Source: Haliotis rubra
Lineage: Eukaryota
NCBI RefSeq assembly: GCF_003918875.1
Contig: NW_025767657.1
Coordinates: 1,364,001-1,428,000 of the forward strand
Length of the DNA stretch: 64,000 bases
Direction: 5' to 3'
Of the stretch, positions 1 to 34,505 are shown piece by piece. Under the pieces are notes generated by a model. It saw nothing but the letters and a program-made list of their open reading frames with translations, had not been told where the DNA came from and ran no database searches. How positions within the stretch are numbered: the stretch's first letter is position 1; each line of letters begins with the position of its first letter. The position numbers and the translations under genes were made by a program.

Positions 1-244
1 ACTGATACTAGGGTTATGATATTGCTTTATACAGCACTAAACCCACTCTCTGGACATCCTGCATACCACTAACTTTGATGTTGGTCCAATTTAACAAGGA
101 CTGTCATTTCAATGTTCACGGGTACAAGGAGACTAGACTGGCATTTTCACACAACATGCATGTTCTTGCTCATAATAAGCTTAGGCTGCGTATTTATTTC
201 TTATATTTGACTCTCATTGCAAAAATAACTTTGCATACTTTTTT

Positions 245-690
245 TGCCAAACTGAGAACACGAGCTTTACTTGTGTTATGTTTTTAAGTAAGTGGCTTTT
301 CAGCATACTGCAGTGTTGTTTTATTTTTGGTGTATGTTGCCAAACTGAGAACACGAGCTTTACTTGTGTTATGTTTTTAAGTAAGTGGCTTTTCAGCATA
401 CTGCAGTGTTGTTTTATTTTTGGTGTATGTTGCCAAACTGAGAACACGAGCTTTACTTGTGTTATGTTTTTAAGTAAGTGGCTTTTCAGCATACTGCAGT
501 GTTGTTTTATTGTTGGTGTATGTTGCCAAACTGAGAACACGAGCTTTACTTGTGTTATGTTTTTCAGCATACTGCAGTGTTGTTTTATTTTTGGTGTATG
601 TTGCCAAACTGAGAACTCGAGCTTTACTTGTGTTACGTTTTTAAGTAAGTGGCTTTTCAGCATACTGCAGTGTTGTTGTTTTTATTATTA
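245..690. repeat. 93-bp minisatellite (~5 units; ~3 units at 6757-7015, ~2 at 12590-12780)
   Basis: Unit TGCCAAACTGAGAACACGAGCTTTACTTGTGTT... starts at 245, 338, 431, ~524 and ~602. One shorter 78-bp variant is present. Confidence 0.95.
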
Positions 691-1553
691 TAAAACATTA
701 AAGGACAGTTGAAGGGGAAACTAAAGAACTGGAAGAAACTGAGAAGAAATTGATAGAAATCACTTTCAAAATTATTTTCTCAAGGCTTTCTCTGTTTCGC
801 ATCATACGTTGAATTTGTCCAAGCTGCAAGATTTTGGGGAGATAATAATCGAGATGTAATCGAGATGTAATCGACTTATGCGATCAACGGATTCAGTTTG
901 ATATTTTTAATGAATCTATTTTTTTCTTATGCAAAACTTTCTGTCTTGGTCAATTCTTTGCGTTTCTTGTCTACACTGATACAACAGCAGGTTAATAAAA
1001 GGTGGGTAGATATGATTTACAGGTAAACTTATTGATTAAAACTGTAGATAAACTTGTAATTCCTTTGACGAAAACGTTGTTACTGCAGTTTATGTCGAAC
1101 CTGTCTTGTCCAGTATTCATAGCAGAGCGCGACATTGCAGTATTTTTACAAATGGCACAAACAATTACTTAGAAGCGGAACCGCGACTTTCTTCACTGCT
1201 TTAGTGCCAAACTTGACACTGCTCAATCCCGCCAAAATTACTATCACAGTGATTGAAACCAAATACTCACCTTATTTTGATGACACCTGCCATTCTAAAG
1301 AAATCTCACACTGCACAAACACAATACTTTCCACATTATACTATGTCATTCGAAAACTTTAATATCAAATAGGGCATCATTTCTTTTCAGTATGGTGTTT
1401 CACGTAGCCACCAAATTCTGAACATGGGTCGGTCGGTCGGGAGAAAAAACATTTAATAAAGACAAAATTATCTGAATAATGTTCTTGGTTCTCATTTATT
1501 GTAATTCTTACTATAATTTCTCGCGTTCCTTGGACTTCGACTGATTGAAAGAT

Positions 1554-2456
1554 ATTTGATGTGACGGTTTGCCAATGTAGGGGATGGATATCTTGATGGG
1601 GGCTGAATCTGGTTTGGGTCTTTTGGTAGGAGGTGACAGGGTTGCAGCGATGGTTCTGTTGACTATTTGGGATGGAAAGTGGTTACGTTCTACGAAGACT
1701 TTCAGCCCCCATCAAGATATCCATCCCCTACATTGGCAAACCGTCACATCAAATCAGCCGTCTACTAAAACAACAAGCTGGCATAGACACCACCTTCTCC
1801 GCGTCCTCCAACCTTAACAACATTCTCCATGCCAATGGAATAAAACCCGCCACCGTAAAGAACAACAACCCAAAATGTGTCATCTACAAAATAAACTGTG
1901 ATTGTGGGCAGAGCTTCATAGGCAAAACTTCCCGACCCATCAACACCCGAGTGAAAGAACATCAGACCTCTGTTACCAATTCCGACAGCAAATCAGCCAT
2001 TTCCGACCACATCAAAGCAAGCCCCAATCATCAAATAGAGTGGTCTCACCATTCTCTCCAACAAACAAACAGACTTCACTAAACGCAAGCTCACCGAAGC
2101 CATCCACATCAAACGCCATAAGTCAACCCTCAACAGAGACCAAGGATACTTCATTCCATCCGCTTATGATGCACTCATCCGCCAAGCCCAATCTACTGTA
2201 TAAACTCTGCTGTATAAACATCTCATAATTATTTGTACATCATTGGCTTCCACGCCTGTCCTTTGTTTACTCTCTGGCTTCATCAGCTTTCTGCCTAGCC
2301 AATTATGTTGTTTTCTTTGTTACATTGTTACATCCAGTATATATACACTTCCCCCTTCCTATCCCATTATGCTTGACAACGGTACAAGAATCTGTATCGA
2401 AACGTCGCACTCACGAATAAAAAGAAGTTGTTATCCATAAAGTTTGTTCTATATTG
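1554..2456 (+). mobile_element. 5'-truncated Penelope-like retroelement (GIY-YIG endonuclease end + pLTR) with inverted 5' segment
   Basis: ORF 1672-2082 has ISIPYIG...CVIYKINCDCGQSFIGKTSRPINTRVKEH...SAISDH, then EAIHIKRHKSTLNRDQG in a shifted frame. 1554-1700 is the reverse complement of the upstream part of the same ORF. Absent from copy 2 of the array. Confidence 0.92.
2372..2408 (+). ncRNA. Variant minimal hammerhead-ribozyme-like motif in the Penelope pLTR
   Basis: CTTGACAAC-GGTACA agaatc TGTATC-GAAACG: a stem flanked by a degenerate CUGANGA core and GAAAC, followed by AATAAA at 2416. Penelope pLTRs are known to carry hammerheads. Confidence 0.55.
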
Positions 2457-2651
2457 TAGATTTGGGGTTGTTTTGTTCAACCGTATTAATCATTTCACTA
2501 ATTTTGTCCCCAATCATCCCAAATTGTTCGTTAAAAACTTAAATTTACTTATTACAAATATTTATTTTCATATTATAGCTATGTTAATCAATACCATTAT
2601 TAATTGAACACACTCGGGTTGTGAGTAGAACTTAATCATATTCCCATTAAC

Positions 2652-3500
2652 TTGTTGAACCAGTTTACCGACTGGAGAGAATATGATATTCTGCTTTCAC
2701 TGCTTACTGTACTCAATGATGAAACAAAGTATTTGTCTGAAGAAGGTCTACAAATTACGTGTAAGAATATGTTTGCAGATCAGCTAAAGGTGACAGATGA
2801 GAAGACTACAGCACTGGAGAAGGCAACAATTGTCAGAATACATCGTCAGTATGGTTTTAGTATTGAGTCGGACGTTTCACAGCCTCCTGATTTGGTGGTA
2901 TCTTTCATTATCAATGTAAACCTGATCAGATTTCGTTATTGGAAAAGAAAATGCCGTATGACCAGACTACTGACAGCGAGAGGAATTGCCGAACTGGGGT
3001 ATCAGTTTTTTTGTGAATGGGGTCCAAGCACGAGAAAGATGTCCTTAAAGAGTTCCCGTGCCTTATGATGTCACCTCATACCAACCTTGCCTTAAGCAGT
3101 TCACGTTTAGTAGTTTCTCACTTTTCGAAACTCCCTTCCCTAAGATAGTCGTAAGTACCATACATTAACATTAACTTACGACTATCTTGGCGCAAAGAGA
3201 GCTTGGAAAACCTAGGCCCTGATTCTTATGTTTCATGTGATTGCTGTGGGTGAGGACTAATTGAAGTGAAATGTCTCTTTAAAACATAAAGATCAACAGC
3301 CACGCAAGTTAGCAGACCAACAGTTCTTCCTCAATCCCCACACCGTGTCAAACCCCCTCTGTAGCAATGCTCTTAAGCTTTCTCACAATCACTGCTATCA
3401 AATCCAAAGATAGCTACATGTTAAAAATCTGAATTTTGTGACTGTGGTGCGGTATATTAAAGGTTTCCATGTAGAACGTTTATTATGTGGTGCAGACATT
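2652..3500 (+). pseudogene. Decayed YqaJ (lambda-exonuclease-like) gene, ISL2EU/Kolobok-type transposon accessory ORF, copy 1
   Basis: Across frameshifts: LEKATIxQNTSSVWF*Y*VGRFTAS (~2812-2890; YqaJ T-x-GQ...W...GR-x-TAS), DSYVSCDCCG-EGLIEVKCLFK (3221-3283), HCYQIQ, and GFHVER. A MITE end interrupts it at ~3040-3219. Confidence 0.8.
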
Positions 3501-5424
3501 AGGCAGTGTTTATCGGGCGGAACCAACGAACCGCGCCGAGGTCTGGAGGAGGAAGAGAGAGAGGTGGAGGTGCGACAGGAGTGTCCTACTCGAAGTAGGC
3601 AGAGGAGCCATGGAGAGCGTGTGGTGGTCCGGCCCACTGTGGAGGGGATTCCGGTGCAGGTTGTCATCCAGCACCGGAGGAGATCGCCGCCATGCCGGAG
3701 GAGAGAGGTGGAATACCAGCTGTCACCACCGCCACAACCGAAGAGGCCAAGTTCGACGGTGACAAGACCAGACCTTCCTCAGGGAGGGCCCTGGGGGCCT
3801 AAAAGGACAAGAAAGCAGGAAGAGAGATACCCCGTGGTGTGGGACCACTTGGGGGGGCCGGAAGGGGCCGGTTCCTGGAGCAGACCAAAGACAGGAGGGG
3901 TCCTCATCCAAGACAAAGGGGGGTCTTGGAGTCGACACCCTCGGTGGTGTCGAGGGGAGAGCCCAGGAGTTGGAGGGGTCGAGGATCCCGTTGTCCCGTA
4001 GAGGGATGTGGGACAGTAACCCATAAGCTGCAGGACCATGCCTTTTTTGCGCACCTCCCGCGTTATTTTCGGGCCCGGTTTCCCCAAGAGAACCCTCCCG
4101 AACGAGAGGTGATAGACAGGATAGTGACGGCCCTACGACAGCTGGCGTCATTGGTTCTGGGTCCGGGCGCAACCCTAGAGGGACTACATGAATTCTGCAA
4201 CCGCAACATTCAGTTGTCCCCTGACTGCACGCTACAGGAAAACTCGATAGCCGGACTGAGACACTTGTGCACGGCTCAGGGATGGCGCATTCCAACAAAG
4301 TTCAGCCTGCGGCCCTTCAATTCTCCCGCGTGTCTGAAACAGTGGAGGGTGCTGCTTCATCTCCTTAATTTCGTGCCCCAGGACAAGAGGAGGGAGTTCC
4401 GCCTGCCTCTGGTGTCAGCGCCCCAGCATACTCGCTGGACTGCTCAGGTCCAGGCCCCCCAGGATTGGGACCAAGAACTGATGGACGTTGAACCAGCTGA
4501 GGCCATGTGGCTGCCGGAGGGGGAAGGGTCAGGGAAGTAGAGACATCGTGGGGAGAGGAGCTTGCGTCTGGGGGGTCGGCAGAAGAAGGCATGCTCCAGG
4601 GTCCAGGGGGTCTCGAACATTTGTTCGATGCCCACTTCCACCTGGATAGGGCATGGGCGGGCACGTTTGGGAAAACGACCAAGGGAACCACTCCTGAACT
4701 GTTGGCAGCAGCCCCAGAGGTGGATCACCCATTTGGAGAGCTGCCCGTCTGGGATTAGAAATATATTGTGATCCCCCTACGTATCCTCAGCAGATCAGCG
4801 ATGACCCCAGATATATCACAGCAGTGGGGATCCAGCCGAAAAAGATTGCCAGTTTAACGGACAAAGTGTTTCGCCAGCTTCTGGGATTTTGGCAAAACGC
4901 CCGATGTCTAGTGGGGGAGGTCGGGTTAGACCACTCGGTCCCTGCGTGGGAATGGAAAGCCCAGGAATCCGCCCTGAAAGAACTGCTACCACATGTCCCA
5001 GCCAAGCGGGTGGTAATTATGCATGTACGGGGACCTGCTGGAGATGAGGAGGCGGGGGCAACCCACGCCCAGGCGATCCAGATCTTGAGGGGAATTCTGC
5101 CTTCAGAGCAACCGTACACGTGCACTGTTTCGCTTGGGGCGGGAGGAGAGGCGGTGCAGAATGCCTGAATGCGTTTCCCCAGGCCTACTTTGGCTTCACT
5201 GGCCGGGTGCGGGATTCACGCCAGACCAGGTGGCGGTCTGAGAGTGGTACCGGCGACCGGCTGTTGTTGGAGACGGATTCCCGTACATGCCGCCAAAAGG
5301 GTACGGTCAACTCCCCAGCACTGCTGTGCCTGATTGAGGACATGGTAGCTGGGAAAAGGGGATGATTACAGAGGAGCTGCTTGCGGTCAATACCGCGAAC
5401 GCAGCTCGGTTGTTCGCTCTGTAG
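3500..5424 (+). pseudogene. GC-rich intronless ZnF + TatD-family DNase gene, copy 1 (multiple frameshifts)
   Basis: CPVEGC...H...H, then FDAHFHLD, VGEVGLDH, IMHVRG, HCF and LLLETDS in shifting frames. Stop TAG at 5422-5424. The start is undefined. Confidence 0.9.
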
Positions 5425-5573
5425 AGGTGCAGGGAGCCCACCCCACAGGGGAGTGGGGTAGGTAGAAGAGTGACAAGGGATGAGAGGTTTCACCCTAAGG
5501 AGGGGGTGAAGGGGGAAAATCAAGTTTGAAGAACTATGGGTTCCTCCCCATGGAGAAGGTAGGACAGGGGACA

Positions 5574-6192
5574 TGTGAAGAGCTGTGTGCCATATTCTAT
5601 TGGAGGTGGAGCCCGGGTATGTTGTGCAAGGGACAGTTGGTCCCACCCTAACGGTGGGGTGGGTTGGGGTTAAGGATATTACGAACTGTTGGTTCCACCC
5701 AAAAGGGCGGGTGTGATTCAGACGAAAGAGCAGGGGATCACCCGCTCATGTGAACAAAATGATAAAGGGACGGACTCTTGAACCTGGGTGAACAGGAAGT
5801 GATTTCTCCGGGTTGACATTCATAAGGAGACCCCTCAGAGAAAAAGTTAACAAGAGGGGTGTGATGGCGTTCGTTCCGCGGGAAGGAGCCTATAAAACAG
5901 GGAGGGATGTGGTGATCGGAGCTGTCAACCGGAAGTTGGGGGACCCGACGGAAAGAGCCGGAGACAGCCGATCGCCACAGCGAGTTCGTGGAAGCCATCT
6001 TGTGAGTATAACATTGCCTGATTCAGGGGTCTACATAAAACCGTAGATTTGGGCCTAAATACTTACAAGGTGCGAGCTGCGATTAACTCCACGGTGATAT
6101 AATAACGTGGTGAAGCCTGTGATCACTAATACATTTTACGAGAACATTCGTGTGACGTCACCTATATTCGTGAGTCCGTTCCAGGAACTACA
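5574..6192 (+). promoter_or_regulatory. LTR-like segment after TatD: purine tract, TG...CA ends, TATA box, splice donor (copy 2: 11410-12028)
   Basis: GGAGAAGGTAGGACAGGGGACA precedes TGTGAAG at 5574. CCTATAAAA at 5889-5897, ETS-like ACCGGAAGT at ~5928, GCCATCTT|GTGAGT donor at 6002, end GGAACTACA at 6192. No second LTR of the same element or TSD was found, and boundaries are tentative. Confidence 0.5.
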
Positions 6193-6258
6193 TAGTGTAG
6201 CATAATGGCTTAAATATGATATTGCATAGGGCATCTTGGTGCATTGTATATTATTATA

Positions 6259-7429
6259 TCTATATAAAATCTAAAACTCCGCCGACAGTATGGATCCGAG
6301 AGGCGAAAGGCTACTTCCGGCATAACGTCATAGTATTGCCAGTTCCCGGTGGTTGGTGAGAGAGAAAAGTTGGGCGTTTGCGAGAGGGACTGAAACCGGG
6401 ATCAGTAGCTGTTTGCAAAGTAGAGGGAAGCGGGTATTGTATAGTTTCAAACTGAAGGTCCAGCATTATTATATCCATTTGTTTTCATACGAAGGGATTA
6501 TTTCGACTGATACTAGGGTTATGATATTGCTTTATACAGCGCTAAACCCACTCTCTGGACATCCTGCATACCACTTACTTTGATGTTGGTCCAATTTAAC
6601 AAGGACTGTGTCATTTCAATGTTCACGGGTACAAGGAGACTAGACTGGCATTTTCACACAACATGCATGTTCTTGCTCATAATAAGCTTAGGCTGCGTAT
6701 TTATTTCTTATATTTGACTCTCATTGCAAAAATAACTTTGCATACTTTCATTTTTTTGCCAAACTGAGAACACGAGCTTTACTTGTGTTATGTTTTTAAG
6801 TAAGTGGCTTTTCAGCATACTGCAGTGTTGTTTTATTTTTGGTGTATGTTGCCAAACTGAGAACACGAGCTTTACTTGTGTTATGTTTTTCAGCATACTG
6901 CAGTGTTGTTTTATTTTTGGTGTATGTTGCCAAACTGAGAACTCGAGCTTTACTTGTGTTACGTTTTTAAGTAAGTGGCTTCTCAGCATACTGCAGTGTT
7001 GTTGTTTTTATTATTATAAAACATTAAAGGACAGTTGAAGGGGAAACTAAAGAACTGGAAGAAACTGAGAAGAAATTGATAGAAATCACTTTCAAAATTA
7101 TTTTCTCAAGGCTTTCTCTGTTTCGCATCATACGTTGAATTTGTCCAAGCTGCAAGATTTGGGAGAGATAATAATCGAGATGTAATCGACTTATGCGATC
7201 AACGGTTTCAGTTTGATATTTTTAAGGAATCTATTTTTTTCTTATGCAAAACGTTCTGTCTTGGTCAATTCTTTGCGTTTCTTGTCTACACTGATACAAC
7301 AGCAGGTTAATAAAAGACGGGTAGATATGATTTACAGGTAAACTTATTGATTAAAACTGTAGATAAACTTGTAATTCCTTTGACGAAATGGTTGTTACTG
7401 CAGTTTATGTCGAAACCTGTCTTGTCCAG
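6259..7429 (+). mobile_element. Putative non-autonomous Helitron carrying the 93-bp minisatellite (also <1-1113 and 12095-13143)
   Basis: 5' A|TCTATATAAAATCT and 3' GTCTTGTCCAG|T (CTAG-like), inserted at AT with no TSD, internal tandem repeats. No convincing subterminal hairpin. Confidence 0.4.
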
Positions 7430-7663
7430 TATTCATAGCAGAGAGCGACATTTGCAGTATTTTTACAAATGGCGCACCTAGAAGCTTCAGCTTTAGTGCC
7501 AAACTTGACACTGCTCAATCCCCCCAAAATGACTATCACAGTGATTGAAACCAAATACTCACCTTATTTTGATGACACCTGCCATTCTAAAGAAATCTCA
7601 CACTGCACAAACCCAATACTTTCCACATTCTACTATGTCATTCTAAACATCTTTAATATCAAA

Positions 7664-8001
7664 TAGGGCATCATTTCTTTTCAGTATGGTGTTTCACGTA
7701 GCCACCAAATTCTGAACATGGGTCGGTCGGTCGGGAGAAAAAACAATTAATAAAGACAAAATTATCTGAATAATGTTCTTGGTTCTCATTTATTGTAATT
7801 CTTACTATAATTTCTCGCGTTCTTTGGACTTCGACTGATTGAAAGATAAACATTTTATATTATGACGAGGCGGTACGTTTTAGGTTCGAGTCAGCTGTGA
7901 ACATTGGAATGAAAAAAAACCCCAGTTTTGGGAGGGTCGGCAATACAATTAGAAGGGTCGCTCGGGCGATGAGAAACAAAAAAATAGAAATGCTACCCAA
8001 A
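7664..8001. mobile_element. MITE within the array unit (truncated by Penelope in copy 1, 1370-1554; related fragment at 50321-50492)
   Basis: Imperfect termini TAGGGCATCATTTC / GAAATGCTACCCAA. A clearly homologous dispersed copy lies at 50321. Confidence 0.6.
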
Positions 8002-8035
8002 TTGTATACTAGTATGTCAAACTTCTTTTCAGACA

Positions 8036-9260
8036 TGGAGAAGTGTGTTTTCATGTTGCTAGAATTTTGTTCAAAATAGAGGCCTGTGTTCCGTCTTGAA
8101 TTCAATAAAGTTGCTCGCACATCAATGCCCTGTGCATGGAATCAGAACTTCACTTAAAAGTTAATTAACTATATAGTAATTGGAACTGAACTAGATTTTG
8201 TGTTGTTTTGTTCAACTGTATTTATCATTTCACCAGTTTTGTCCCCAATCATCCCAAATTGTTCGTTAAAAACTTAAATTTACTTTATTACAAATATTTA
8301 TTTTCATATTATAGCTATGTGAATCAATACCATTATTAATTGAACACACTCGGGTTGTGAGTAGAACTTAATCATATTCCCATTAACTTGTTGAACCAGT
8401 TTACCGACTGGATAGAATATGATATTCTGCTTTCACTGCTCACTGTACTCAATGATGAAACAAAGTATTTGTCTCAAGAAGGTCTACAAATTACGTGTAA
8501 GAATATGTTTGCAGATCAGCTAAAGGTGACAGCTGAGAAGACTACAGCACTGGAGAAGGCAACAATTGTCAGAATACATCGTCAGTATGGTTTTAGTATT
8601 GAGTGGGACGTTTCACAGCCTCCTGATTTGGTGGTATCTTTCATTATCAATGTAAACCTGATCAGATTTCGTTATTGGAAAAGATAATGCCGTATGACCA
8701 GACTACTGACAGCGAAAGGAATTGCCGAACTGGGGAAACAAAATTGCCGAACTGGGGTATCAGTTTTTTTTGTGAATGGGGTCCAAGCACGAGAAAGATG
8801 TCCTTAAAGAGTTCCCGTGCCTTATGATGTCACCTCATACCAACCTTGCCTTAAGCAGTTCACGTTTAGTAGTTTCTCACTTTTCGAAGCTCCCTTCCCT
8901 AAGATAGTCGTAAGTACCATACATTAACATTAACTTACGACTATCTTGGCGCAAAGAGAGCTTGGAAAACCTAGGCCCTGATTCTTATGTTTCATGTGAT
9001 TGCTGTGGGCGAGGACTAATTGAAGGGAAATGTCTCTTTAAAACATAAAGATCAACAGCCACGCAAGTTAGCAGACCAACAGTTCTTCCTCAATCCCCAC
9101 ACCGTGTCAAACCCCCTCTGTAGCAATGCTCTTAAGCTTTCTCACAATCACTGCTATCAAATCCAAAGATAGCTACATGTTAAAAATCTGAATTTTGTGA
9201 CTGTGGTGCGGTATATTAAAGGTTTCCATGTAGAACGTATATTACGTGGTGCAGACATTA
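8036..9260 (+). pseudogene. Decayed SWIM + YqaJ gene, copy 2
   Basis: GEVCFHVARILFKIEACV...ARTSMPCAWNQ (SWIM C-terminal part, 8036-8150), followed by the same YqaJ motifs as copy 1. Confidence 0.8.
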
Positions 9261-11260
9261 GGCAGTGTTTATCGGGCGGAACCAACGAACCGCGCCGAGG
9301 TCTGGAGGAGGAAGAGAGAGAGGTGGAGGTGCGACAGGAGCGTCCTACTCGAAGTAGGCAGAGGAGCCATGGAGAGCAGGTGGTGGTCCGGCCCACTGTG
9401 GAGGGGATGCCGGTGCAGGTTGTCATCCAGCGCCGGAGGAGATCGCCGCCATGCCGGAGGAGAGAGGTGGAATACCAGCTGTCACCACCGCCACAACCGA
9501 AGAGGCCAAGTTCGACGGTGACAAGACCAGACCTTCCTCAGGGAGGGCCCTGGGGGCCTAAAAGGACAAGAAAGGAGGAAGAGAGATACCCCGTGGTGTG
9601 GGACCACTTGGGGCGACCAGGGGCCGGAAGGGGACGGTTCCTGGAGCAGACCAAAGACAGGAGGGGTCCCCATCCAAGACCAAGGGGGGTCTTGGAGTCG
9701 ACACCCTCGGTGGTGTCGAGGGGAGAGCCCAGGAGGTGGAGGGGTCGAGGATCCCGTTGTCCCGTAGAGGGATGTGGGACAGTAACCCATAAGCTGCAGG
9801 ACCATGCCTTTTTTGCGCACCTCCCGCGTTATTTTCGGGCTCGGTTTCCCCAGGAGAACCCTCCCGAACGAGAGGTGATAGACAGGATAGTGACGGCCCT
9901 ACGACAGCTGGCGTCATGGGTTCTGGGTCCGGGCGCAACCCTGGAGGGACTACATGAATTCTGCAACCGCAACATTCAGTTGTCCCCTGACTGCATGCTA
10001 CAGGAAAACTCGATAGCCGGACTGAGACACTTGTGCACGGCTCAGGGATGGCGCATTCCAACAAAGTTCAGCCTGCGGCCCTTGAATTCTCCGGCGTGTC
10101 TGAAACAGTGGAGGGTGCTGCTTCATCTCCTTAATTTCGTGCCCCAGGACAAGAGGAGGGAGTTCCGCCTGTTTCTGGTGTCAGCGCCCCAGCATACTCG
10201 CTGGACTGCTGAGGTCCAGGCCCCCCAGGATTGGGACCGAGAACTGATGGACGTTGAACCAGCTGAGGCCATGTGGCTGCCGGAGGACGAAGAGGTCCGG
10301 GTCAGGGAAGAGGATGAGTCCGCGGACATGGTGGCTGCTGGAGAAAGCCAAGAGGTGTGTGGGGAAGTAGAGACATCGTGGGGAGAGGAGCTTGCGTCTG
10401 GGGGGTCGGCAGAAGAAGGCATGCTCCAGGGTCCAGGGGGTCTCGAACATTTGTTCGATGCCCACTTCCACCTGGATAGGACATGGGCGGGCACGTTTGG
10501 GAAAACGACCCAGGGAACCACTCCTGAACTGTTGGCAGCCGCCCCAGAGGTGAATCACCCATTTGGAGAGCTGCCCGTCTGGGGGTAGAAATATATTGTG
10601 ATCCCCCTACGTATCCTCAGCAGATCAGCGATGACCCCAGATATATCACAGCAGTCGGGATCCAGCCGAAAAAGATTGCCAGTTTAACGGACAAAGTGTT
10701 TCGCCAGCTTCTGGGATTTTGGAAAAACGCCCGATGCCTAGTGGGGGGAGGTCGGGTTAGACCACTCGGTCCCTGCGTGGGAATGGAAAGCCCAGGAATC
10801 CGCCCTGAAAGAACTGCTACCACATGTCCCAGCCGAGCGGGTGGTAATTATGCACGTACGGGGACCCGCTGGAGATGAGGAGGCAGGGGCAACCCACGCC
10901 CAGGCGATCCAGATCTTGAGGGGAATTCTGCCTTCAGAGCAACCGGTACACGTGCACTGTTTCGCGGGCGGGGAGGAGACGGTGCAAGAATGGCTGAATG
11001 CGTTTCCCCAGGCCTACTTTGGCTTCACTGGCCGGGTGCCGGGATTCACGCCAGACCAGGTGGCCGGTCTGAGAGTGGTACCGGGTGACCGGCTGTTGTT
11101 GGAGACGGATTCCCCGTACATGCCGCCAAAAGGGTACCGGGTCAACTCCCCAGCACTGCTGTGCCTGATTGAGGACATGGTAGCTGGGAAAAGGGGGATG
11201 ATTACGGAGGAGCTGCTTGCGGTCACAACCGCGAACCCAGCTCGGTTGTTTGCTCTGTAG
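9260..11260 (+). pseudogene. ZnF + TatD-family DNase gene, copy 2 (nearly intact; two compensating 1-nt shifts at G runs)
   Basis: ORF 9197-10588 ends ...LFDAHFHLDR...VWG*. The -1 frame reads GVEIYCDPPTYP...AVGIQPK. After an extra G at ~10748 it reads EVGLDH...MHVRG...VHCFAG...YFGFTG...LLLETDSPY...NPARLFAL* (11260). All canonical TatD metal ligands are present. Confidence 0.93.
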
Positions 11261-14049
11261 AGGTGCAGGGAGCCCACCCCACGGGGGAGTGGGGTAGGTA
11301 GAAGAGTGACAAGGGATGAGAGGTTTCACCCTAAGGAGGGGGTGAAGGGGGAAAATCAAGTGTGAAGAACTATGGGTTCCTCCCCAAGGGGAAGGTAGGA
11401 CAGGGGACATGTGAAGAGCTGTGTGCCATATTCCATTGGAGGTGGAGCCCGGGTATGTTGTGCAAGGGACAGTTGGTCCCACCCTAACGGTGGGGTGGGT
11501 TGGGGTTAAGGATATTATGAACTGTTGGTTCCACCCAAAAGGGCGGGTGTGATTCAGAGGAAAGAGCAGGGGATCACCCGCTCATGTGAACAATATGATA
11601 AAGGGACGGACCCTTGAACCTGGGTGAACAGGAAGTGATTTCTCCGGGTGGACATTCATAAGGAGACCCCTCAGAGAAAAAGTTAACAAGAGGGGTGTGA
11701 TGGCGTTCGTTCCGCGGGAAGGAGCCTATAAAACAGGGAGGGATGTGGTGATCGGAGCTGTCAACCGGAAGTTGGGGGACCCGACGGAAAGTGCCGGAGA
11801 CAGCCGATCGCCACAGCGAGTTCGTGGAAGCCATCTTGTGAGTATAACATTGCCTGATTCAGGGGTCTACATAAAAGCGTAGATTTGGGCCTCAATACTT
11901 ACAAGGTGCGAGCCGCGATTAACTCCACGGTGATCTAATAACGTGGTGAAGCCTGTGATCACTACAACATTTTACGAGAACATTCGTGTGACGTCACCTA
12001 TATTCGTGAGTCCGTTCCAGGAACTACATAGTGTAGCATAATGGCTTAAATAAGATATTGCATAGGGCATCTTGGTGCATTGTATATTATTATATCTATA
12101 TTAAAATCTAAAACTCCGCCAACAGTATGGATCCGAGAGGCGAAAGGCTACTTCCGGCATAACGTCATAGTATTGCCAGTTCCCGGTGGTTGGTGAGAGA
12201 GAAAAGTTGGGCGTTTGCGAGAGGGACTGAAACCGGGATCAGTAGCTGTTTGCAAAGTAAAGGGAAGCGGGTATTGTATAGTTTCAAACTGAAGGTCCAG
12301 CATTATTATATCCATTTGTTTTCATACGAAGGGATTATTTCGACTGATACTAGGGTTATGATATTGCTTTATACAGCGCTTAACCCACTCTCTGGACATC
12401 CTGCATACCACTTACTTTGATGTTGGTCCAATTTAACAAGGACTGTGTCATTTCAATGTTCACGGGTACAAGGAGACTAGACTGGCATTTTCACACAACA
12501 TGCATGTTCTTGCTCATAATAAGCTTAGGCTGCGTATTTATTTCTTATATTTGACTCTCATTGCAAAAATAACTTTGCATACTTTCATTTTGCCAAACTG
12601 AGAACACGAGCTTTACTTGTGTTATGTTTTTTTAAGTAAGTGGCTTTTCAGCATACTGCAGTGTTGTTTTATTTTTTGGTGTATGTTGCCAACTTGTGTT
12701 ATGTTTTCAGCATACTGAGAACACGAGCTTTACTTGTGTTATGGCTTTTCAGCATACTGCAGTGTTGTTTTTTATTATTATAAAACATTAAAAAGGACAG
12801 TTGTATGTTTATAGCACTTTCAAAATTATTTTCAAGGCTTTCTCTGTTTCGCATCATACGTTGAGTCCAAGCTGCAAGATTTGGGAGAGATAATTCGAGA
12901 TGTAATCGACTTATGATCAAAACAGTTTGATATTTTTAAAGGAATCTATTTTTTTCTTATGCAAAACGTTCTGTCTTGGTCAATTCTTTGCGTTTCTTGT
13001 CTACACTGATACAACAGCAGGTTAATAAAAGGTGGGTAGATATGATTTACAGGTAAACTTATTGATTAAAACTGTAGATAAACTTGTAATTCCTTTGACG
13101 AAATGGTTGTTACTGCAGTTTATGTCGAACCTGTCTTGTCCAGTATTCATAGCAGAGCGCGACATTGCAGTATTTTTACAAATGACGCAAACAATTACCT
13201 AGAAGCGGAACCGCGACTATCTTCACTGCTTCAGTGCCAAACTTGACACTGCTCAATTTGCCACAATGACCCTTGAGGAAGGCTTGCAAGGACGAGTCCA
13301 AAGGATGGACAGAAGCCTCTTCCATCACAAGTGCTTGCTCTCCCTGGCACTTCTCTCAACACCGAGGACCGTTCACCAGCTAGAAAGTCACGGCTATACA
13401 ACTACCGTACCTTGCTAGACATCTCGCAAGGAAGGATCAGTGGTCAAACTGCCAGAGCCACGATCCTGATGTATCAAGCTACCCAACGCCACGGACAGAG
13501 TTGCTCGCTGTATAGAGGCAGGGAGGATCGGTCTCTGTCTAGAGGCTGATTAATAGGTCAGGGCACCTGACCTTTGAAGATGTGATGGCCATCACGACGA
13601 TTTAGATATTCCTGAATTTTTAATTGCAAAAAAGTGTTAGACTCTTCCTGAAACCAAGACGGACAAGGTTTATTAGAAGTTTGAGTCCCAGCAGCCACAA
13701 TATATTTGAATATATGTTATATCACGTCTATTCCTCGTTGATATTTGATAGTAATGAGACTTATGTGGCCATAAATGTTCCACATCGTGCAACATTTCTG
13801 TGCAGGTCAATGTGGGACAAGCAGATAGAGCGAAAACACATGTTTTTCCCCCCAAGATATTTGTCTTTCACTTTATCTTTGTTGGATTTAATTTAGACAA
13901 CTGGTAGGATTTAATTTAGACAACTGGTAGGTTTCATAACTCCTATTGTCTTTGTAGAGTATGACCCGAAACCTGAAAATATCATTTATTACGAATTTTG
14001 AAATATTTATGTTAAAGGGACAAAACAAGTTTCAATCCATCACCACTGC

Positions 14050-25629: not shown

Positions 25630-26955
25630 AATTTTGCCCTTTCTAGCAGAAGCAATCGCATATTCTCAAACTAAAGCATACCAATATTTCCTTTTTTTGA
25701 AGCTACAACTAAATTACTGGCTACACAAACTCATATTATTCCATCCTCAATCTCTTACTCTGCTGTCGTTTCTGCGTCAAAATCCAAAGTTAACAGTCCA
25801 TATCTTCAATTGATAGTGATGTCAACAACTTGTCATCAGCTGCATCACAGACTGAGATTCACCCTGAACCTCCGACTTCGCCTGAACCAGAAACTGAAAT
25901 TGGGACAGTACAAAAATCACACAAAATCTGTAAAACTGACAAGTACGGAAAGAAAACAATTAAAATAGAAAGAATTATAATCCCTCAAACATGTTGAGGG
26001 GCATTCCCCATTAACATCCTCCATAGAGGTTCATAACAACTTGAACCTTTGGACAAGGAAGTCAATACATCTCCGTCGTCCATTCAACGGAGAGGATCTA
26101 CACCAAGATCCCGATCTCCAGTTAAACCTCCATGAGCTGTTCTTTTAATATTCTTCAGTGGAATTGTAGAGGATTAAGAAACCATGTTAATGATTTGCAA
26201 CGTTTAATTTAAAACCATCAGCATTATGTTTGCAGGAAACCTACCTCAAATCCACAGATAATTTTTTATTTAAGGCGATATGATTCCTACAATTGTTTTT
26301 CACCTCCAGGTGATATCATGGAACTATCCACAGCGTTGTTCCTCTCAATACCCCTCTTCAGGCAGTTGCGGTTCGTGTTACTCTCCATATTGTTGTCGCC
26401 TTGTGTTCACTGTACATTCCGCCATCATCGTCTCTGCAGCAGTCTGACCTTCAGATGCTTTATGACCAACTCCCCAAACCTTGCATTATCATGGGAGATT
26501 TTAATGGTCATAACCCGCTTTTGGGCAGTAGTAACACCAACACAAAAGGAAAGATTCTCGAGGATTTCTTCACAAGTACCGGTTTATGTATTTTTAATGA
26601 TAGTTCTAGCACATATCTTCATCCTGCAACTGGTTCATACTCCTCTCTGGACTTATCTGTTGCGGATTCAAGTTTATACAATGAATTTGAATGGTCAGTC
26701 CACGATGACCTTTATGGAAGTGACCATTTTCCCACTATTCTATCACCCATAAAGCCAAGTGATGCCGCCCCATCGTCAAGGTGGAACTTTAACAAGGCAG
26801 ATTGGTCTTTATTTGAGACTTTATGCAATAACAGATTAAAACCCGAATTCCTTCCAAATGTGTTTGATCCTATTCAGGTGTTTTCTGATGAATTAAATAT
26901 GATTGCTGATGATTGTATTCCAAAGTCCTCTATGGTTCCACACATCCGTAAGCCA
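25630..26955 (+). mobile_element. 5' part of an I-group LINE: ORF1 end + APE endonuclease
   Basis: NISFFEA (ORF1 tail); ILQWNCRGL, CLQET, CSLYIPP, MGDFNGH, SSLDLS, GSDHFP, RWNFNKADW. Confidence 0.93.
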
Positions 26956-28443
26956 ACGGTATGTCCATATACCGTTTGATCCAATAATGTCACGATTGCA
27001 ACAAACTCATCATCTTCTTAAGAAAATAGTGAGCAAATTTCATAGATGGGTTTCCAACACCATATATCTCGCGCAGACTGATGTAATTGAATATTGACAT
27101 CTGGAAAGTGACAAAGAAAAACACTTTAAAATATGTATTTAGCTATGTTTTGGTTTCTACAAGTTTTAAAAAGACATAAGTTATGCTTTTTACCAATTCA
27201 ATTGCGGTACTTTTGTTTTCTATCACTGAAAAATGGGTGTACGGTATTACATGCACTATATTTATTGTGAATGAAAATGATCCTGTAATATCGTACACCT
27301 TATTTTACACTGATTCTGAGAATATTTGTATGGTGGTGTTATGTTTTTTTAATGTTTATAAAGCTTAAGACATAATGAATCTGATTTCATATTTGTAAAC
27401 ATGATGCGTATTTCAAACATACCGCGATTGGATGTTGAAGTAGGTTGTTCCTAGGCAGCGTGGTTGGGCTTTCCGTGCAGAGATTGGAAGAGGAGCGCTT
27501 ATGCGCAGGTTCACCCACAGATAACCAATCACATCGTTGATAACAAAGGCGATAACATACGGGTCTCAGTCTTAAAATATACCGCGGGTTTCCCAAATTA
27601 CAAAACCATTGCTTTACGAACAGACAACAGACACACAATTTGTTATTCGAATTATTATTCAACTGTACGGAATTAGGCGCCTGTACGGTATTTGCCACCC
27701 CGACTCTATACTTCAAATGCAGTTGTGACAAATGCATCGCTGAATTCCTCATACATTTTAGAATCAACTTACAAATGGTCTTTGTCACTAAAACCAAGTG
27801 GTTACAAAAAAACGAAACAGGATGTGAAAACGGAACGTTGTGATCATAACAGTATTTTTTTAGAATATGCACGGAAAGAGTATCGTAGCAAGAACTAGAA
27901 AAGTAAAAACAGATACAATACTGTAATTTGATATTTTCACACGAAAGCTCTGTGCAGCGTGACGCCATGCCAGACGCAAAATCATGGAGAACGACATAGG
28001 CAATTGGCATTTCTTGCTTTTTCAATGAAAACAATAAAAACATATAACCATAAGCAGATAGTCAGAAAGTTTCTGATTACATACATCATACATTTATGGA
28101 CTAAGGTTCCCTCGTAAAATCGCGGGCCACGAAGCCGCAATTTTAATGAGTAATCGCTCATCGGTAGTGATGTCATACGTCAACATTGTTGTACATATGT
28201 GGCAATTTCTTTGAGGCGAAATCGGTTGAATAAGAGTAAACAATCACACTGTCCTGCGAACTATACTTTCAGTATTAATGTATAATTTGCGTATAGGACT
28301 TCCAGTTCGATGGTAATGGCGACAGGTCGCTAATTTTCACCGCTTCTGCAATATACCCCAATCTTCGCTGAACACAATGCCCAACGGTCGCAGGGCCACA
28401 CGTCTGGGTAAGCAGGACAATAAACAATCACTCTACGGGAAAA

Positions 28444-32209: not shown

Positions 32210-34505
32210 GTTGAGTTTAGTTGGGCTTTGCGTCACATCGCCTTTATTCCAGCCATATAGTGACGAGAACAAGTCTGCATTAATAAACATTGTAGGTACA
32301 GAGTCAAAATGAGTTTTATTTCAAAAGCATATATTCATTACATTGTCATTTAAAAACAGAAAAAGTCATAGCACTAAATTTAAAGGCAGGCATTTGTTAG
32401 TCACATTACACAGTTACAATTTATGATACAGATCAACTTCCCTCATGTACTTCACTATCAGATGAGCGCTCACGCGGGAGAACAGATCTTTCACATTTGT
32501 TGCATCATAATGTGAGTCCCTTCTAGACGATAAGTTCACACAGTCAAGCAGAATATGCTTGATGGTGAAAACCTCACCACAAGAGACACACATGGGGGGG
32601 GGTCCATCCCCATCCGTTTTCAGCAGATAGTCATGAGTAAACCGACTGTGGCCAATACGACATCGTCGTAAAATTACCTCATCACGTCTTGACTGACAAC
32701 CTTTTGCTGCAGCGTCGGCTTTTGTGTTACCTGCTATGCCCACGTGACCCGGCAACCAGCAGAGGACGATGTCACATTGGCCAGGAGAGAGGTCGTTGTA
32801 AAGTTCTAAAATGTCCAGAATGATGGGGTGACTTGAAGTAACATTTTGAAGTGCTTGAAGGCAAAATAATGAATCTGTGAAAACGATGAAGTTTCTAGAA
32901 TGATTCTGCTGTTTAATATAGGTCAAAGCCGAAAAGATAGCTTTGGCCTCGGCAGTGAAAATGGAACTGTTGTCGGGAATCCAGTCTTGGATCCAATGAC
33001 TGTAGAACTGGCAACTTGGCCCTCATCCTTGGATCCGTCTGTGAAAATGGATCTATGGGTGTCATACTTGAAACGTAACTGGTTGAAACGTAACTGGTTG
33101 TATTCCTGCTGGAACACCAAAGGATTTGTTTCGGACTTTTTTAGTTTAGTGAGGGTAAGATCGACCTGTGGTTTCACCATCTGCCAGGGTGGTGATGACA
33201 TGAGTGCTATGATATTGAGATCAATTTTAGCTGCAGATATGTGTGGTTGAATTCTGATTCCAAGTGGTGGAAGGCTTGGTAGTTTAGGAAACAGGTTTTC
33301 ATAGAGAGGGTTGAAAACACAATTGTATGCTGGATTGGACTGTTTTGAACGTAATTTAGTGATATATTGCAGTGAAATTTAATGCAGCTTTGTTCAAGGT
33401 AAGGTTCGGTAGCCTATGCATATAGACTGTCTACCAGCGAGGTCCTAAAAGCTCCCAGGCAGAGCCTCAGGCCTTGGTGGTGGATAGAATCTATTTTTTC
33501 TAAATTGCTAATCTAGTTAAGAGCGAACCAAAGATCTGTACAAGCGAAGGAGAATAGTCTGATCCTCTCCCCACTCTGTATTTGAAACGACTTTTAGTAA
33601 GTCCAGAGCCTTCAAGCACTTGGTTTTCAAATATTTTATGTGTGGTAAGAATGTCAGGTGACGGTCGAATATGAGTCCCAGGAATTTAGCCTCTTCTACT
33701 CCCTTGATGGGAGTACCATCTAAAGATAGGTCTGGAACCTTGTGTGGTTTATTTACGACAAAAGTGAATACACTTTGTTTTGGAGTTTGAAAACTTAAAG
33801 CCATTTTCATTGGCCCATTTTTGGATTTTGTTAAGGCAGAGTTGTAGTTGTCTTTCTATTGCATGCATGTTCTTACCACGACATGAAATATTGAAATCGT
33901 CCAGGAAAAGGGACCCATCAACACAACTGTTCAAGACGTTAGCGAGGCTGTTAATTTTTATGCTAAAAAGGGTGACAGACAGGGTGCTGCCTTGAGGGAC
34001 GCTCTGTTCTTGGTGGAAATAATCAGACAGTGTGGAACCTACCCGTACTTGAAATTGTCTGTTGTTTAAAAACTGAGATATGAACCGAGGTAATCTGCCC
34101 CTCAATCCAAATTCATGTAAATCTTTTAAGATACCATGTTTCCACGTTGTATCGTATGCTTCGTAAGTCGAAAAAGATGGATACAGTATGTTGTTTGTTG
34201 ACAATGGAATTTTTTATAAAAGATTCCAGATGGTCAATGGTACTTCGGGTTTTTTTCGGAAACCACATTGGTCTCCAAGTACCAGATTAATCGATTGTTG
34301 AGCGTGCGCTCCATGGTTTTACAAACACAGCTAGTGATATAGGACGGTAGTTTGATCCCGGCCAGGTTTTGGTATAGGGATGATAATGGCATCGTGCCAC
34401 GAAGGAGGAAAGTTGCCGGTTGTCCAAATGTCATCAAATATATTGAGTAGTGTTTCCAAAATTCAATCAGGGAGGTGTTTGAGGAGCTGATAATGAACGT
34501 AACCA
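32210..34505 (-). mobile_element. 5'-truncated RNase H-containing LINE (RT, RNase H, CCHC-like end, 3' tail)
   Basis: CVCKTMER, AYDTTW, SVPQGSTLS, LFLDDF, KFLGLIFD, IFTDGSK, WLPGHVGIAGN, CVSC...HILLDC. 3' tail TTCTCGTCACTATATGGCTGGAAT...AACTAAACTC. Confidence 0.95.

What the first reader, a model, noticed from the sequence alone, without database searches (positions are those of the whole stretch)
9260..11260. Intronless zinc-finger + TatD DNase cassette behaving as mobile, amplified cargo
Seen: a sharply bounded GC/purine-rich ~2.7-kb island in AT-rich DNA. It truncates a transposon YqaJ relic and is present in both full array units. It encodes an Arg/Pro-rich basic N-terminus, a CPxxGC..H...H finger, a helical region, an acidic linker and a complete TatD barrel (DxHxH, GExGLD, HxR, HCF, ETDSPY). 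Established: TatD proteins are metal-dependent 3'-5' exonucleases/AP endonucleases, and animal TATDN1-3 are typically spliced low-copy genes. Inference: this is not a host TATDN gene but an accessory nuclease carried by a retroelement-like TE. I do not know of a described TE family defined by TatD cargo. It could process cDNA or R-loops, or act against competing elements or DNA-based immunity.
Basis: partly seen in the sequence, partly recalled or inferred. Interest (0 to 1): 0.85.

Follow-up and report, generated by a model that had tools for sequence, protein, structure and literature searches.

The report
Dead tail of TatD-carrying gypsy retrotransposon
The GC-rich island is the broken rear end of an abalone Ty3/gypsy retrotransposon whose third gene encodes a zinc-knuckle protein fused to a TatD nuclease, an accessory gene that I also found in sea-urchin and other marine-invertebrate copies and that no paper I could search describes.

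Summary
A 2.7-kb GC/purine-rich island (9247-11966) and its twin (3488-6128) carry a basic region, a CxxxxC..H..H knuckle, a helical domain, an acidic linker and a TatD domain.

The genome is Haliotis rubra. The island is not a host TATDN gene or a processed pseudogene. It is the 5'-truncated tail (ORF3, 3' UTR, polypurine tract, 223-nt 3' LTR) of a ~10.3-kb Ty3/gypsy element ordered gag, pol (PR-RT-RH-IN-PHD finger), ORF3.

- **Window copies are dead.** Both lack the ORF3 start and pol and share one frame break. They were doubled by tandem segmental duplication, not transposition.
- **Genome-wide linkage.** At least 20 of 54 TatD loci have this pol directly upstream.
- **Other taxa.** The same pol-PHD-then-TatD order occurs in sea urchin; a Tara Oceans scaffold also shows gag. 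The two-domain ORF3 also occurs in bivalves, other gastropods and Lingula.
- **Selection.** TatD dN/dS is about 0.1, most members keep the catalytic motifs, and ORF3 swaps between lineages as a cassette.
- **Expression.** A pyrimidine-tract/CAG motif before the ORF3 ATG suggests env-like splicing. This is unproven.

The literature searches found no description. The nearest precedent is rotifer LTR elements with a DEDDy-exonuclease ORF3.

Other first-stage readers of this scan had already noted gypsy+TatD elsewhere in this genome.

The parts
9247..11966 (+). Copy 2 of the 5'-truncated tail of the LTR retrotransposon (ORF3 remnant, 3' UTR, polypurine tract, 3' LTR)
   Evidence: blastn to full genomic elements: 87-90% identity from 9247/9305 to 11966. 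No pol or gag of this family anywhere in the 64-kb window.
9247..9757 (+). Basic Arg/Pro/Ser-rich N-terminal region of ORF3, lacking its own start
   Evidence: Alignment A1. In intact relatives the N-terminus has pI 10-12 and 18-25% R+K. The ATG of full copies lies ~70 nt upstream of where homology begins.
9758..9820 (+). Zinc knuckle C-x4-C-x9-H-x4-H
   Evidence: Read directly from the sequence. The first Cys and first His are invariant in the 7-sequence N-domain alignment; in the 150-sequence alignment a His and the following Pro of the knuckle are >=90% conserved and the consensus keeps CPxxGC.
9821..10200 (+). Helical domain of unknown fold (conserved NSPACLKQWRVLLHLLNF)
   Evidence: AlphaFold2 residues 1-146 are confident. 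No match in PDB or ESM Atlas: Foldseek E > 1, best VIA-align Z 3.4. The profile finds 504 cluster representatives.
10201..10450 (+). Acidic linker
   Evidence: Translation; variable in length among copies.
10451..11260 (+). TatD domain (Group II, HxH type), split over three frames by breaks near 10581 and 10743; stop codon at 11258-11260
   Evidence: Three-frame translation. Pfam PF01026 1.4e-24 on 10745-11257. Indel map against an open genomic copy.
11261..11729 (+). 3' untranslated region of the element
   Evidence: Collinear with full copies.
11730..11743 (+). Polypurine tract
   Evidence: Purine run directly before the LTR, identical to the one before the 3' LTR of the full copy on contig C1780.
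11744..11966 (+). 3' LTR (223 nt, TG...CA)
   Evidence: Matches both LTRs of the full copy on C1780 at 92%.
3488..6128 (+). Copy 1 of the same tail, more decayed; its LTR is about 5908-6128
   Evidence: 96.7-97.0% identical to copy 2. Shares the frame break at ORF3 codon ~493 and has at least 12 further frame-breaking indels.
8570..9040 (+). Weak YqaJ-like relic upstream of the island. The unit-1 equivalent is 2834-3280. In unit 2 only 8974-9039 was hit directly; the start at 8570 is extrapolated from unit 1 by the ~5736-nt unit offset.
   Evidence: tblastn of genomic YqaJ-bearing ORFs, E 8e-6. Not detected by Pfam.
6506..12342 (.). Tandem unit B of the segmental array (unit A is 1-6505; a partial unit C starts at 12343)
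   Evidence: Direct-repeat families with spacing 5.7-6.5 kb.

Best explanation
The island is the rear part of a Ty3/gypsy LTR retrotransposon of Haliotis rubra. The intact element is about 10.3 kb and is ordered as follows: 223-nt LTR; leader with a 41-nt tandem repeat; gag; pol (protease, RT, RNase H, integrase ending in a PHD finger); ORF3; 3' UTR; polypurine tract; LTR. ORF3 encodes a basic, probably nucleic-acid-binding and nuclear N-terminus, a zinc knuckle, a helical domain of unknown fold, an acidic linker and a Group II (HxH) TatD metal-dependent nuclease. The window holds only ORF3 (without its start), the 3' UTR and the 3' LTR. This fragment was already frame-broken when a ~6-kb stretch of host DNA containing it was tandemly duplicated. 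Inferred, not shown: in live elements ORF3 is translated from an env-like spliced subgenomic mRNA. Its nuclease then acts on the element's own nucleic-acid intermediates, either by trimming 3' ends or abortive cDNA, or by removing RNA from RNA:DNA hybrids. It does not act as an envelope protein.
For: Identity of the genome: the ORF3s of two loci equal RefSeq 'uncharacterized protein' entries of Haliotis rubra.

Element anatomy: the full copy on C1780 has TG..CA LTRs 97.7% identical, a 4-bp target-site duplication, a TGGCGC... primer-binding site and a polypurine tract. Pfam gives the pol order PR-RT-RH-IN-PHD.

Linkage: 20 of 54 TatD loci have this pol C-terminus upstream on the same strand, 18 of them within 0.7-2.3 kb. 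This is a lower bound, because only 123 of 1245 pol candidates were scored.

Same order elsewhere: a Tara Oceans scaffold carries gag, pol-PHD and TatD. A Strongylocentrotus purpuratus locus has a pol 49.6% identical to the abalone pol with the TatD ORF 12 nt downstream.

Family size and range: the N-domain profile finds 504 cluster representatives, and 76 of the best 150 carry TatD downstream. Of 95 TatD-region hits, 82 carry the N-domain, including bivalves, gastropods, Lingula and three sea urchins.

Selection: TatD dN/dS is 0.08-0.12 at dS 0.23-0.43. The catalytic D/H/E/D columns are invariant or at least 90% conserved. The AlphaFold2 model has pLDDT 95 and its top 17 Foldseek hits are all TatD enzymes. 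The nearest solved sequence is E. coli YcfH, 3e-29.

Not an envelope protein: no hydrophobic segment.

Splicing hint: a pyrimidine tract plus CAG lies 1-25 nt before the ORF3 ATG in four divergent lineages.

The window copy is dead and was duplicated as dead DNA.
Against: No RNA evidence for ORF3 or for the splice. The only runs available were contigs of uncertain type that cover the pol end and the LTR but not ORF3. No biochemical data exist for any member. 34 of 54 TatD loci had no detected pol; these may be fragments, unscored candidates or host genes. Some relatives have eroded catalytic motifs and stand in pol-less tandem arrays, so the module can also exist outside elements.
Confidence: 0.9

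Rival explanations
1. It is a processed pseudogene or retrocopy of a spliced, low-copy host TATDN2-like gene that landed in AT-rich DNA.
For: It is intronless, GC-rich against the flanks and frame-broken. Like TATDN2 it has a long basic N-terminal extension before a Group II TatD domain (paper PMC10085689).
Against: There is no poly(A) tail; the ORF is followed by a 3' UTR, a polypurine tract and a TG..CA LTR. Relatives sit directly after a gypsy pol in abalone, in sea urchin and on a Tara Oceans scaffold. There are dozens of copies spanning 31-88% identity. The N-domain is specific to this module and finds hundreds of clusters.
Confidence: 0.02
2. The knuckle-TatD gene is a host (or domesticated) multigene family that is only sometimes adjacent to retrotransposons. 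The window shows a decayed tandem gene pair.
For: RefSeq annotates open copies as genes. One 578-aa open copy on C1336 has no pol within 8 kb. An unrelated contig (L027) holds a tandem array of open, pol-less copies.
Against: The window copies end in the element's own 3' UTR, polypurine tract and LTR. The spacing to pol is constant across lineages and phyla. The pol-less tandem copies on L027 have eroded catalytic motifs and dN/dS of 0.5-0.6, which fits derivatives rather than ancestors.
Confidence: 0.05
3. ORF3 plus the LTR is a self-standing, non-autonomous mobile cassette, which is the first reader's 'mobile, amplified cargo'.
For: ORF3 behaves as a module. Between lineages with gag-pol 90-93% identical, ORF3 is only 69-72% identical, with breakpoints just after the pol stop and after the ORF3 stop. 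Tail-only copies exist.
Against: The window copies have one LTR each, no 5' LTR, no primer-binding site and no target-site duplication of their own. They share flanking host DNA and a frame break, as expected from segmental duplication. The cassette exchange is explained by template switching between co-packaged RNAs.
Confidence: 0.03

Closest known systems
Vesta and Juno LTR retrotransposons of bdelloid rotifers, with a DEDDy 3'-5' exonuclease or GDSL esterase ORF3 (Rodriguez, Kenefick and Arkhipova 2017, PMC5408684)
   Same: An LTR element with an enzymatic, non-envelope ORF3 downstream of pol. The ORF3 is a nuclease-type hydrolase without a transmembrane segment, its catalytic residues are intact, and it is exchanged as a module between element lineages.
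   Different: The enzyme superfamily differs: a TatD TIM-barrel metallo-hydrolase instead of a DnaQ-like DEDDy fold. Here it is fused to a zinc-knuckle/helical domain of unknown fold. The hosts differ (molluscs, brachiopod, echinoderms). Purifying selection is clear here, whereas the rotifer ORFs showed no significant departure from neutrality according to that paper.
Cellular Group II TatD nucleases: E. coli YcfH and YjjV, human TATDN2 and TATDN3 (PMC10085689; PMC10711561)
   Same: HxH motif, GExGxD, H, H and ExD metal ligands, TIM-barrel fold. Like TATDN2, a long basic N-terminal extension precedes the C-terminal TatD domain.
   Different: It is encoded inside a retrotransposon, intronless and multi-copy, and has a specific knuckle-helical domain. 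Which cellular clade it came from was not resolved; the search for true TATDN2 orthologues returned only other multi-copy sea-urchin proteins.
Errantiviruses, the env-carrying Ty3/gypsy elements (PMC13524379)
   Same: A third ORF after pol, and a likely splice acceptor before it.
   Different: ORF3 has no signal peptide, transmembrane segment or fusion-protein similarity. That survey reports no env-carrying gypsy elements in echinoderms, where the TatD type does occur.
Retroelements with a chromatin-reader module on integrase (chromoviruses; PHD fingers in retrotransposons, cited in PMC6673714)
   Same: The pol of this family ends in a PHD finger.
   Different: It is a PHD finger, not a chromodomain, and this concerns pol rather than the TatD ORF.

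Membership tests
Ty3/gypsy (Metaviridae) LTR retrotransposon | Pol domain order protease, RT, RNase H, integrase | tested here: met
   Pfam on the 1501-aa pol of the C2270 copy: Asp protease 148-238, RVT_1 490-642, RNase H 707-835, Integrase_H2C2 1049-1107, rve 1123-1220, PHD 1443-1487. The sea-urchin pol shows RT, RNase H, integrase and PHD in the same order; no protease match was listed for its 1180-aa open frame.
Ty3/gypsy (Metaviridae) LTR retrotransposon | Paired LTRs with TG..CA ends, target-site duplication, primer-binding site, polypurine tract | tested here: met
   Full copy on C1780: 222/223-nt LTRs 97.7% identical, 4-bp duplication, TGGCGC... after the 5' LTR, purine run before the 3' LTR. 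The window keeps only the polypurine tract and the 3' LTR.
Ty3/gypsy (Metaviridae) LTR retrotransposon | Gag with capsid and zinc-knuckle domains | tested here: inconclusive
   The Tara Oceans copy has weak PNMA_C, PEG10 capsid and zf-CCHC hits. The abalone 524-aa gag ORF has no Pfam hit.
Ty3/gypsy (Metaviridae) LTR retrotransposon | RT phylogeny inside a named gypsy clade | not tested
   No reference RT set (GyDB, Repbase) was available.
TatD nuclease family (PF01026) | Profile match above the curated threshold | tested here: met
   87 bits against a cut-off of 27 for window 10745-11257; 105-118 bits for open genomic copies.
TatD nuclease family (PF01026) | TIM-barrel fold with metal-ligand residues | tested here: met
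   AlphaFold2 pLDDT 95. The top 17 Foldseek hits are TatD enzymes with TM 0.69-0.75. The D, H, E and D columns are invariant or at least 90% conserved in 18 diverse members. In the window the motifs are present but lie in three frames.
TatD nuclease family (PF01026) | Metal-dependent nuclease activity | not testable with these tools
   Needs purified protein.
Group II (HxH) TatD: TATDN2, TATDN3, YcfH, YjjV | HxH motif at the N-terminus of the barrel instead of (G/A)xN | tested here: met
   D-[AST]-H-F-H in most members. The definition comes from PMC10085689. YcfH is the best solved match.
Errantivirus-type envelope ORF3 | Signal peptide, transmembrane anchor, fusion glycoprotein similarity | tested here: not met
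   Maximum 19-residue hydropathy is 1.0-1.6 in nine members and there is no N-terminal hydrophobic stretch. Pfam finds only TatD.
Processed pseudogene of a host gene | Poly(A) tail, own target-site duplication, no transposon context | tested here: not met
   A 3' UTR, polypurine tract and LTR follow the stop codon. Related copies lie after pol.

The most novel reading that the evidence does not exclude
A deep, multi-phylum clade of Ty3/gypsy retroelements (molluscs, brachiopods, echinoderms) carries its own TatD nuclease, made from an env-like spliced message. The element depends on it, either to clear abortive cDNA and RNA:DNA hybrids and so avoid innate nucleic-acid sensing (a self-encoded counterpart of the host exonuclease TREX1), or to finish reverse-transcription intermediates. 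That would be a new class of retroelement accessory enzyme, with an orphan zinc-knuckle/helical targeting domain.
Probability: 0.3. Interest if true: 0.75.

Novelty: new variant of a known kind. Interest (0 to 1): 0.6.

Why it matters
Accessory genes show what limits retroelement replication in a given host. Enzymatic ORF3s are known from only a few cases. This one is conserved under purifying selection, spans at least two and probably three animal phyla, is exchanged as a cassette, and includes a confidently modelled domain with no detectable structural relative.

It gives a concrete, testable question: what does a 3'-exonuclease or hybrid-RNA nuclease do for a retrotransposon in animals that have large nucleic-acid-sensing repertoires?

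There is also a practical point. These ORFs are currently annotated as host genes ('uncharacterized protein', 'TATDN2', 'D-aminoacyl-tRNA deacylase-like', 'YcfH-like'), and some are even filed as bacterial proteins in symbiont genome bins. That contaminates gene sets and orthology tables for molluscs and echinoderms.

Tried and rejected
- **RNA evidence.** The only runs holding the locus were contigs of uncertain type. They cover the pol end and the LTR but not ORF3. The one long 'joint' (locus L017, 1667-3766) has GGTGGT microhomology at both sides rather than GT..AG, so it is a deletion derivative and not a splice. Inconclusive.
- **Fold of the N-domain.** Foldseek against PDB, VIA-align wide and two ESM Atlas searches all gave nothing above noise.
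- **Origin of the TatD domain.** The search meant to retrieve true TATDN2 orthologues returned only near-identical multi-copy sea-urchin proteins, so no tree with TATDN1/2/3 was built.
- **Lingula context.** No exact gene record was found.
- **Systematic flanks of the remaining TatD loci.** I replaced this with a coordinate cross-match of two genome searches.
- **Spliced-mRNA retrocopy.** I considered whether the window copy derives from a spliced subgenomic mRNA. Rejected: there is no 5' LTR or leader upstream, and the truncation lies ~70 nt inside the ORF rather than at the acceptor.
- **Hypermutation of pol in one copy.** The low protein identity was an artefact of indels; nucleotide identity is 90% with a balanced substitution spectrum.
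Full report
**1. What is in the window**

The window is G000:C2767:1364001-1428000 of a 1.38-Gb assembly. Two ORF3 products elsewhere in the genome are identical or near-identical to RefSeq proteins of Haliotis rubra, so the genome is blacklip abalone.

Two GC-rich, purine-skewed blocks stand out of AT-rich DNA at about 3000-6000 and 9000-12000. They lie in two successive units of a tandem array with a 5.7-6.5-kb period; a third, partial unit starts at 12343.

In unit 2 a 463-codon open frame (9197-10588) holds four parts:
- an Arg/Pro-rich basic stretch;
- the knuckle CPVEGCGTVTHKLQDHAFFAH (9758-9820);
- a helical region;
- an acidic linker, followed by the start of a TatD domain (FDAHFHLDR).

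The rest of the TatD domain continues in another frame (10588-10746) and then returns to the first frame (10745-11257: GEVGLD, HVRG, HCF, ETDSPY). Pfam TatD_DNase matches 10745-11257 at 1.4e-24.

**2. What it belongs to**

A six-frame search of the genome with the C-terminal TatD piece gave 61 matches at 31-88% identity, several inside open frames of 470-800 codons. In the fetched loci, the TatD ORF lies directly downstream of a pol ORF on the same strand.

Pfam shows the pol order protease, RT, RNase H, integrase zinc domain, integrase core and a C-terminal PHD finger. This is the Ty3/gypsy order.

The full copy on contig C1780 has these features:
- 222/223-nt LTRs with TG..CA ends, 97.7% identical;
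- a 4-bp target-site duplication;
- a TGGCGC... primer-binding site;
- a purine tract before the 3' LTR;
- total length about 10.3 kb.

The window matches such elements only from 9247 to 11966. That is ORF3 minus its first ~200 nt, the 3' UTR, the polypurine tract (11730-11743) and the 3' LTR (11744-11966). No gag or pol of this family occurs anywhere in the 64 kb.

**3. State of the window copies**

The two copies are 96.7-97.0% identical. Measured against an open genomic copy:
- both begin at the same internal point;
- both share a frame break at ORF3 codon ~493 (10581 and 4751);
- copy 2 has one more break near 10743;
- copy 1 has at least twelve more, clustered at 5114-5356.

The fragment was therefore already dead when the ~6-kb host segment containing it was duplicated. 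The local 'amplification' is segmental, not transpositional.

**4. Is TatD really part of the element?**

I cross-matched the places of the TatD search with a search for the pol C-terminus. Of 54 TatD loci, 20 have that pol upstream on the same strand, 18 of them 0.7-2.3 kb away. This is a lower bound, because only 123 of 1245 pol candidates were scored.

Outside abalone:
- A Tara Oceans scaffold carries gag, pol with PHD, and a 673-aa TatD ORF.
- A Strongylocentrotus purpuratus locus has a pol 49.6% identical to the abalone pol, PHD finger included. A 745-codon TatD open frame starts 12 nt after the end of the pol frame.

**5. The ORF3 family**

A profile of the knuckle-helical domain finds 504 representatives of 50%-identity clusters (257 at E <= 1e-10). 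Of the best 150, 76 carry TatD downstream; most of the others are short fragments.

In the reverse direction, 82 of 95 proteins found with the TatD part carry the N-domain. These include oysters, scallops, clams, mussels, Elysia, the brachiopod Lingula and three sea urchins. The named members I looked up or saw listed are molluscs, a brachiopod or echinoids. Some are filed under bacterial symbiont bins (Sedimenticola, Thiodiazotropha), which probably reflects host DNA in those bins.

**6. Evidence that ORF3 is functional for the element**

- In 18 diverse members the TatD metal-ligand positions are invariant or at least 90% conserved. A minority of members have lost them.
- The AlphaFold2 model of the domain has pLDDT 95, and its 17 best PDB matches are all TatD enzymes.
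- By sequence the nearest solved protein is E. coli YcfH (3e-29), ahead of EcTatD, TATDN3 and TATDN1.
- The HxH motif places it in Group II of Dorival and Eichman (PMC10085689).
- Between abalone sublineages with unsaturated dS (0.23-0.43), dN/dS is 0.08-0.12 for TatD and 0.17-0.35 for the part before it.
- ORF3 is also a recombining module. The C2270 element is 90-93% identical in nucleotides to three others over 7.7 kb of gag-pol and 86-88% identical in the 3' UTR and LTR. It is only 69-72% identical in ORF3, where dS is saturated. The breakpoints lie just after the pol stop and after the ORF3 stop.

**7. How it may be expressed and what it may do**

Four divergent lineages share a pyrimidine tract ending in CAG that lies 1-25 nt before the ORF3 ATG. 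They are the main abalone family, a second abalone family (L025), the Tara Oceans element and the sea-urchin element. This is what a splice acceptor for an env-like subgenomic mRNA would look like. It is inference only: the available runs were contigs and did not cover ORF3.

ORF3 has no hydrophobic segment and a very basic N-terminus (pI 10-12), so it is not an envelope protein.

Published TatD activities are:
- Mg-dependent 3'-5' exonuclease (PMC4176340);
- AP endonuclease (PMC10085689);
- for TATDN2, degradation of the RNA strand of R-loops (PMC10711561; review PMC12754012).

My preferred model is that the enzyme works on the element's own intermediates or by-products, namely 3' ends, abortive cDNA or RNA:DNA hybrids. 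An innate-immunity evasion role is a secondary possibility. None of this is shown.

The knuckle-helical domain is confidently modelled (residues 1-146) but has no detectable structural relative.

**8. Known or new**

Full-text searches for TatD with retrotransposon, with LTR and Gypsy, and for TATDN2 with transposable element found no description. A giant-squid genome paper lists a 'TATDN2' beside transposon genes in the Hox cluster, which may be the same thing.

The closest precedent is the DEDDy-exonuclease or GDSL-esterase ORF3 of rotifer Vesta and Juno elements (PMC5408684). A 2026 survey of env-carrying gypsy elements does not mention this type. Repbase and Dfam could not be queried.

Within this scan, other first-stage readers had already flagged gypsy elements with TatD on other pieces of this genome.

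**9. Verdict**

The family itself is a new variant of a known kind and deserves a proper description.

Noticed in passing
L016:3364-7866 (pol residues 1443-1487); L030:6408-9947 (residues 1131-1175); L028 pol: The integrase of this gypsy family ends in a PHD finger rather than a chromodomain. The finger is conserved from abalone to sea urchin and in the Tara Oceans element, which hints at chromatin-guided integration.
   Followed up: partly
Merged C2270:167000-181999 compared with C1690, C446 and C1780 (locus pairs L016+L022, L011+L017, L015+L021, L014+L020): Clean ORF3 cassette swap: gag-pol is 90-93% identical and the LTR 86-88%, but ORF3 only 69-72%. The breakpoints lie right after the pol stop and after the ORF3 stop.
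   Followed up: partly
L027:1573-4041, 7453-9954, 12886-14041 (ENA contig from another organism): A tandem ~5.9-kb array of open, pol-less ORF3 relatives with two zinc knuckles and eroded TatD motifs (DAHFY; no GExGLD or ETDxP). dN/dS is 0.5-0.6 between units. This may be a derived stand-alone gene family.
   Followed up: partly
L017:1667-3766: Contigs of two possibly-RNA runs carry a related copy lacking 2.1 kb of ORF3. GGTGGT microhomology sits at both edges, so this is a deletion derivative, not an intron.
   Followed up: partly
Full elements: C1780:57477-58100, C1690:14286-14910, C2270:167529-168038, C446:3006760-3007253: A 41-nt tandem repeat array (12-15 units) lies in the 5' leader between the LTR and gag in every full copy inspected.
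   Followed up: no
window 244-729, 6756-7055, 12641-12803: A 93-nt tandem repeat with open frames on both strands forms part of each array unit.
   Followed up: no
window 26401-26976 (+), 32414-32923 (-), 33749-34201 (-): Other retroelement remnants: an Exo_endo_phos_2 endonuclease (2e-21), an RNase H fragment and an RVT_1 fragment (1e-16). They are unrelated to the TatD element.
   Followed up: no
Proteins P0139, P0068, P0206, P0038, P0128: ORF3 relatives of 490-970 aa are deposited as 'TatD family hydrolase' of Sedimenticola and Candidatus Thiodiazotropha genome bins. This is probably host (bivalve) DNA binned with symbionts.
   Followed up: no
Protein P0031 and its cluster (Mytilus edulis and M. 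galloprovincialis): A 2488-aa gene model contains the knuckle-helical domain at 1639-1774 but no TatD, and is clustered with EF-hand/PDCD6-like proteins. It is likely a chimeric gene model that swallowed an element fragment.
   Followed up: no
window 5114-5356: Copy 1 has about ten single-base deletions within 250 nt relative to other copies. This is an unusual cluster and could be assembly error rather than decay.
   Followed up: no
L019:3345-5078 (C1336): A 578-codon open ORF3 copy has no pol within 8 kb and altered motifs (HFN, HVCG, SPCM). It is annotated as a RefSeq gene (LOC124277357).
   Followed up: partly
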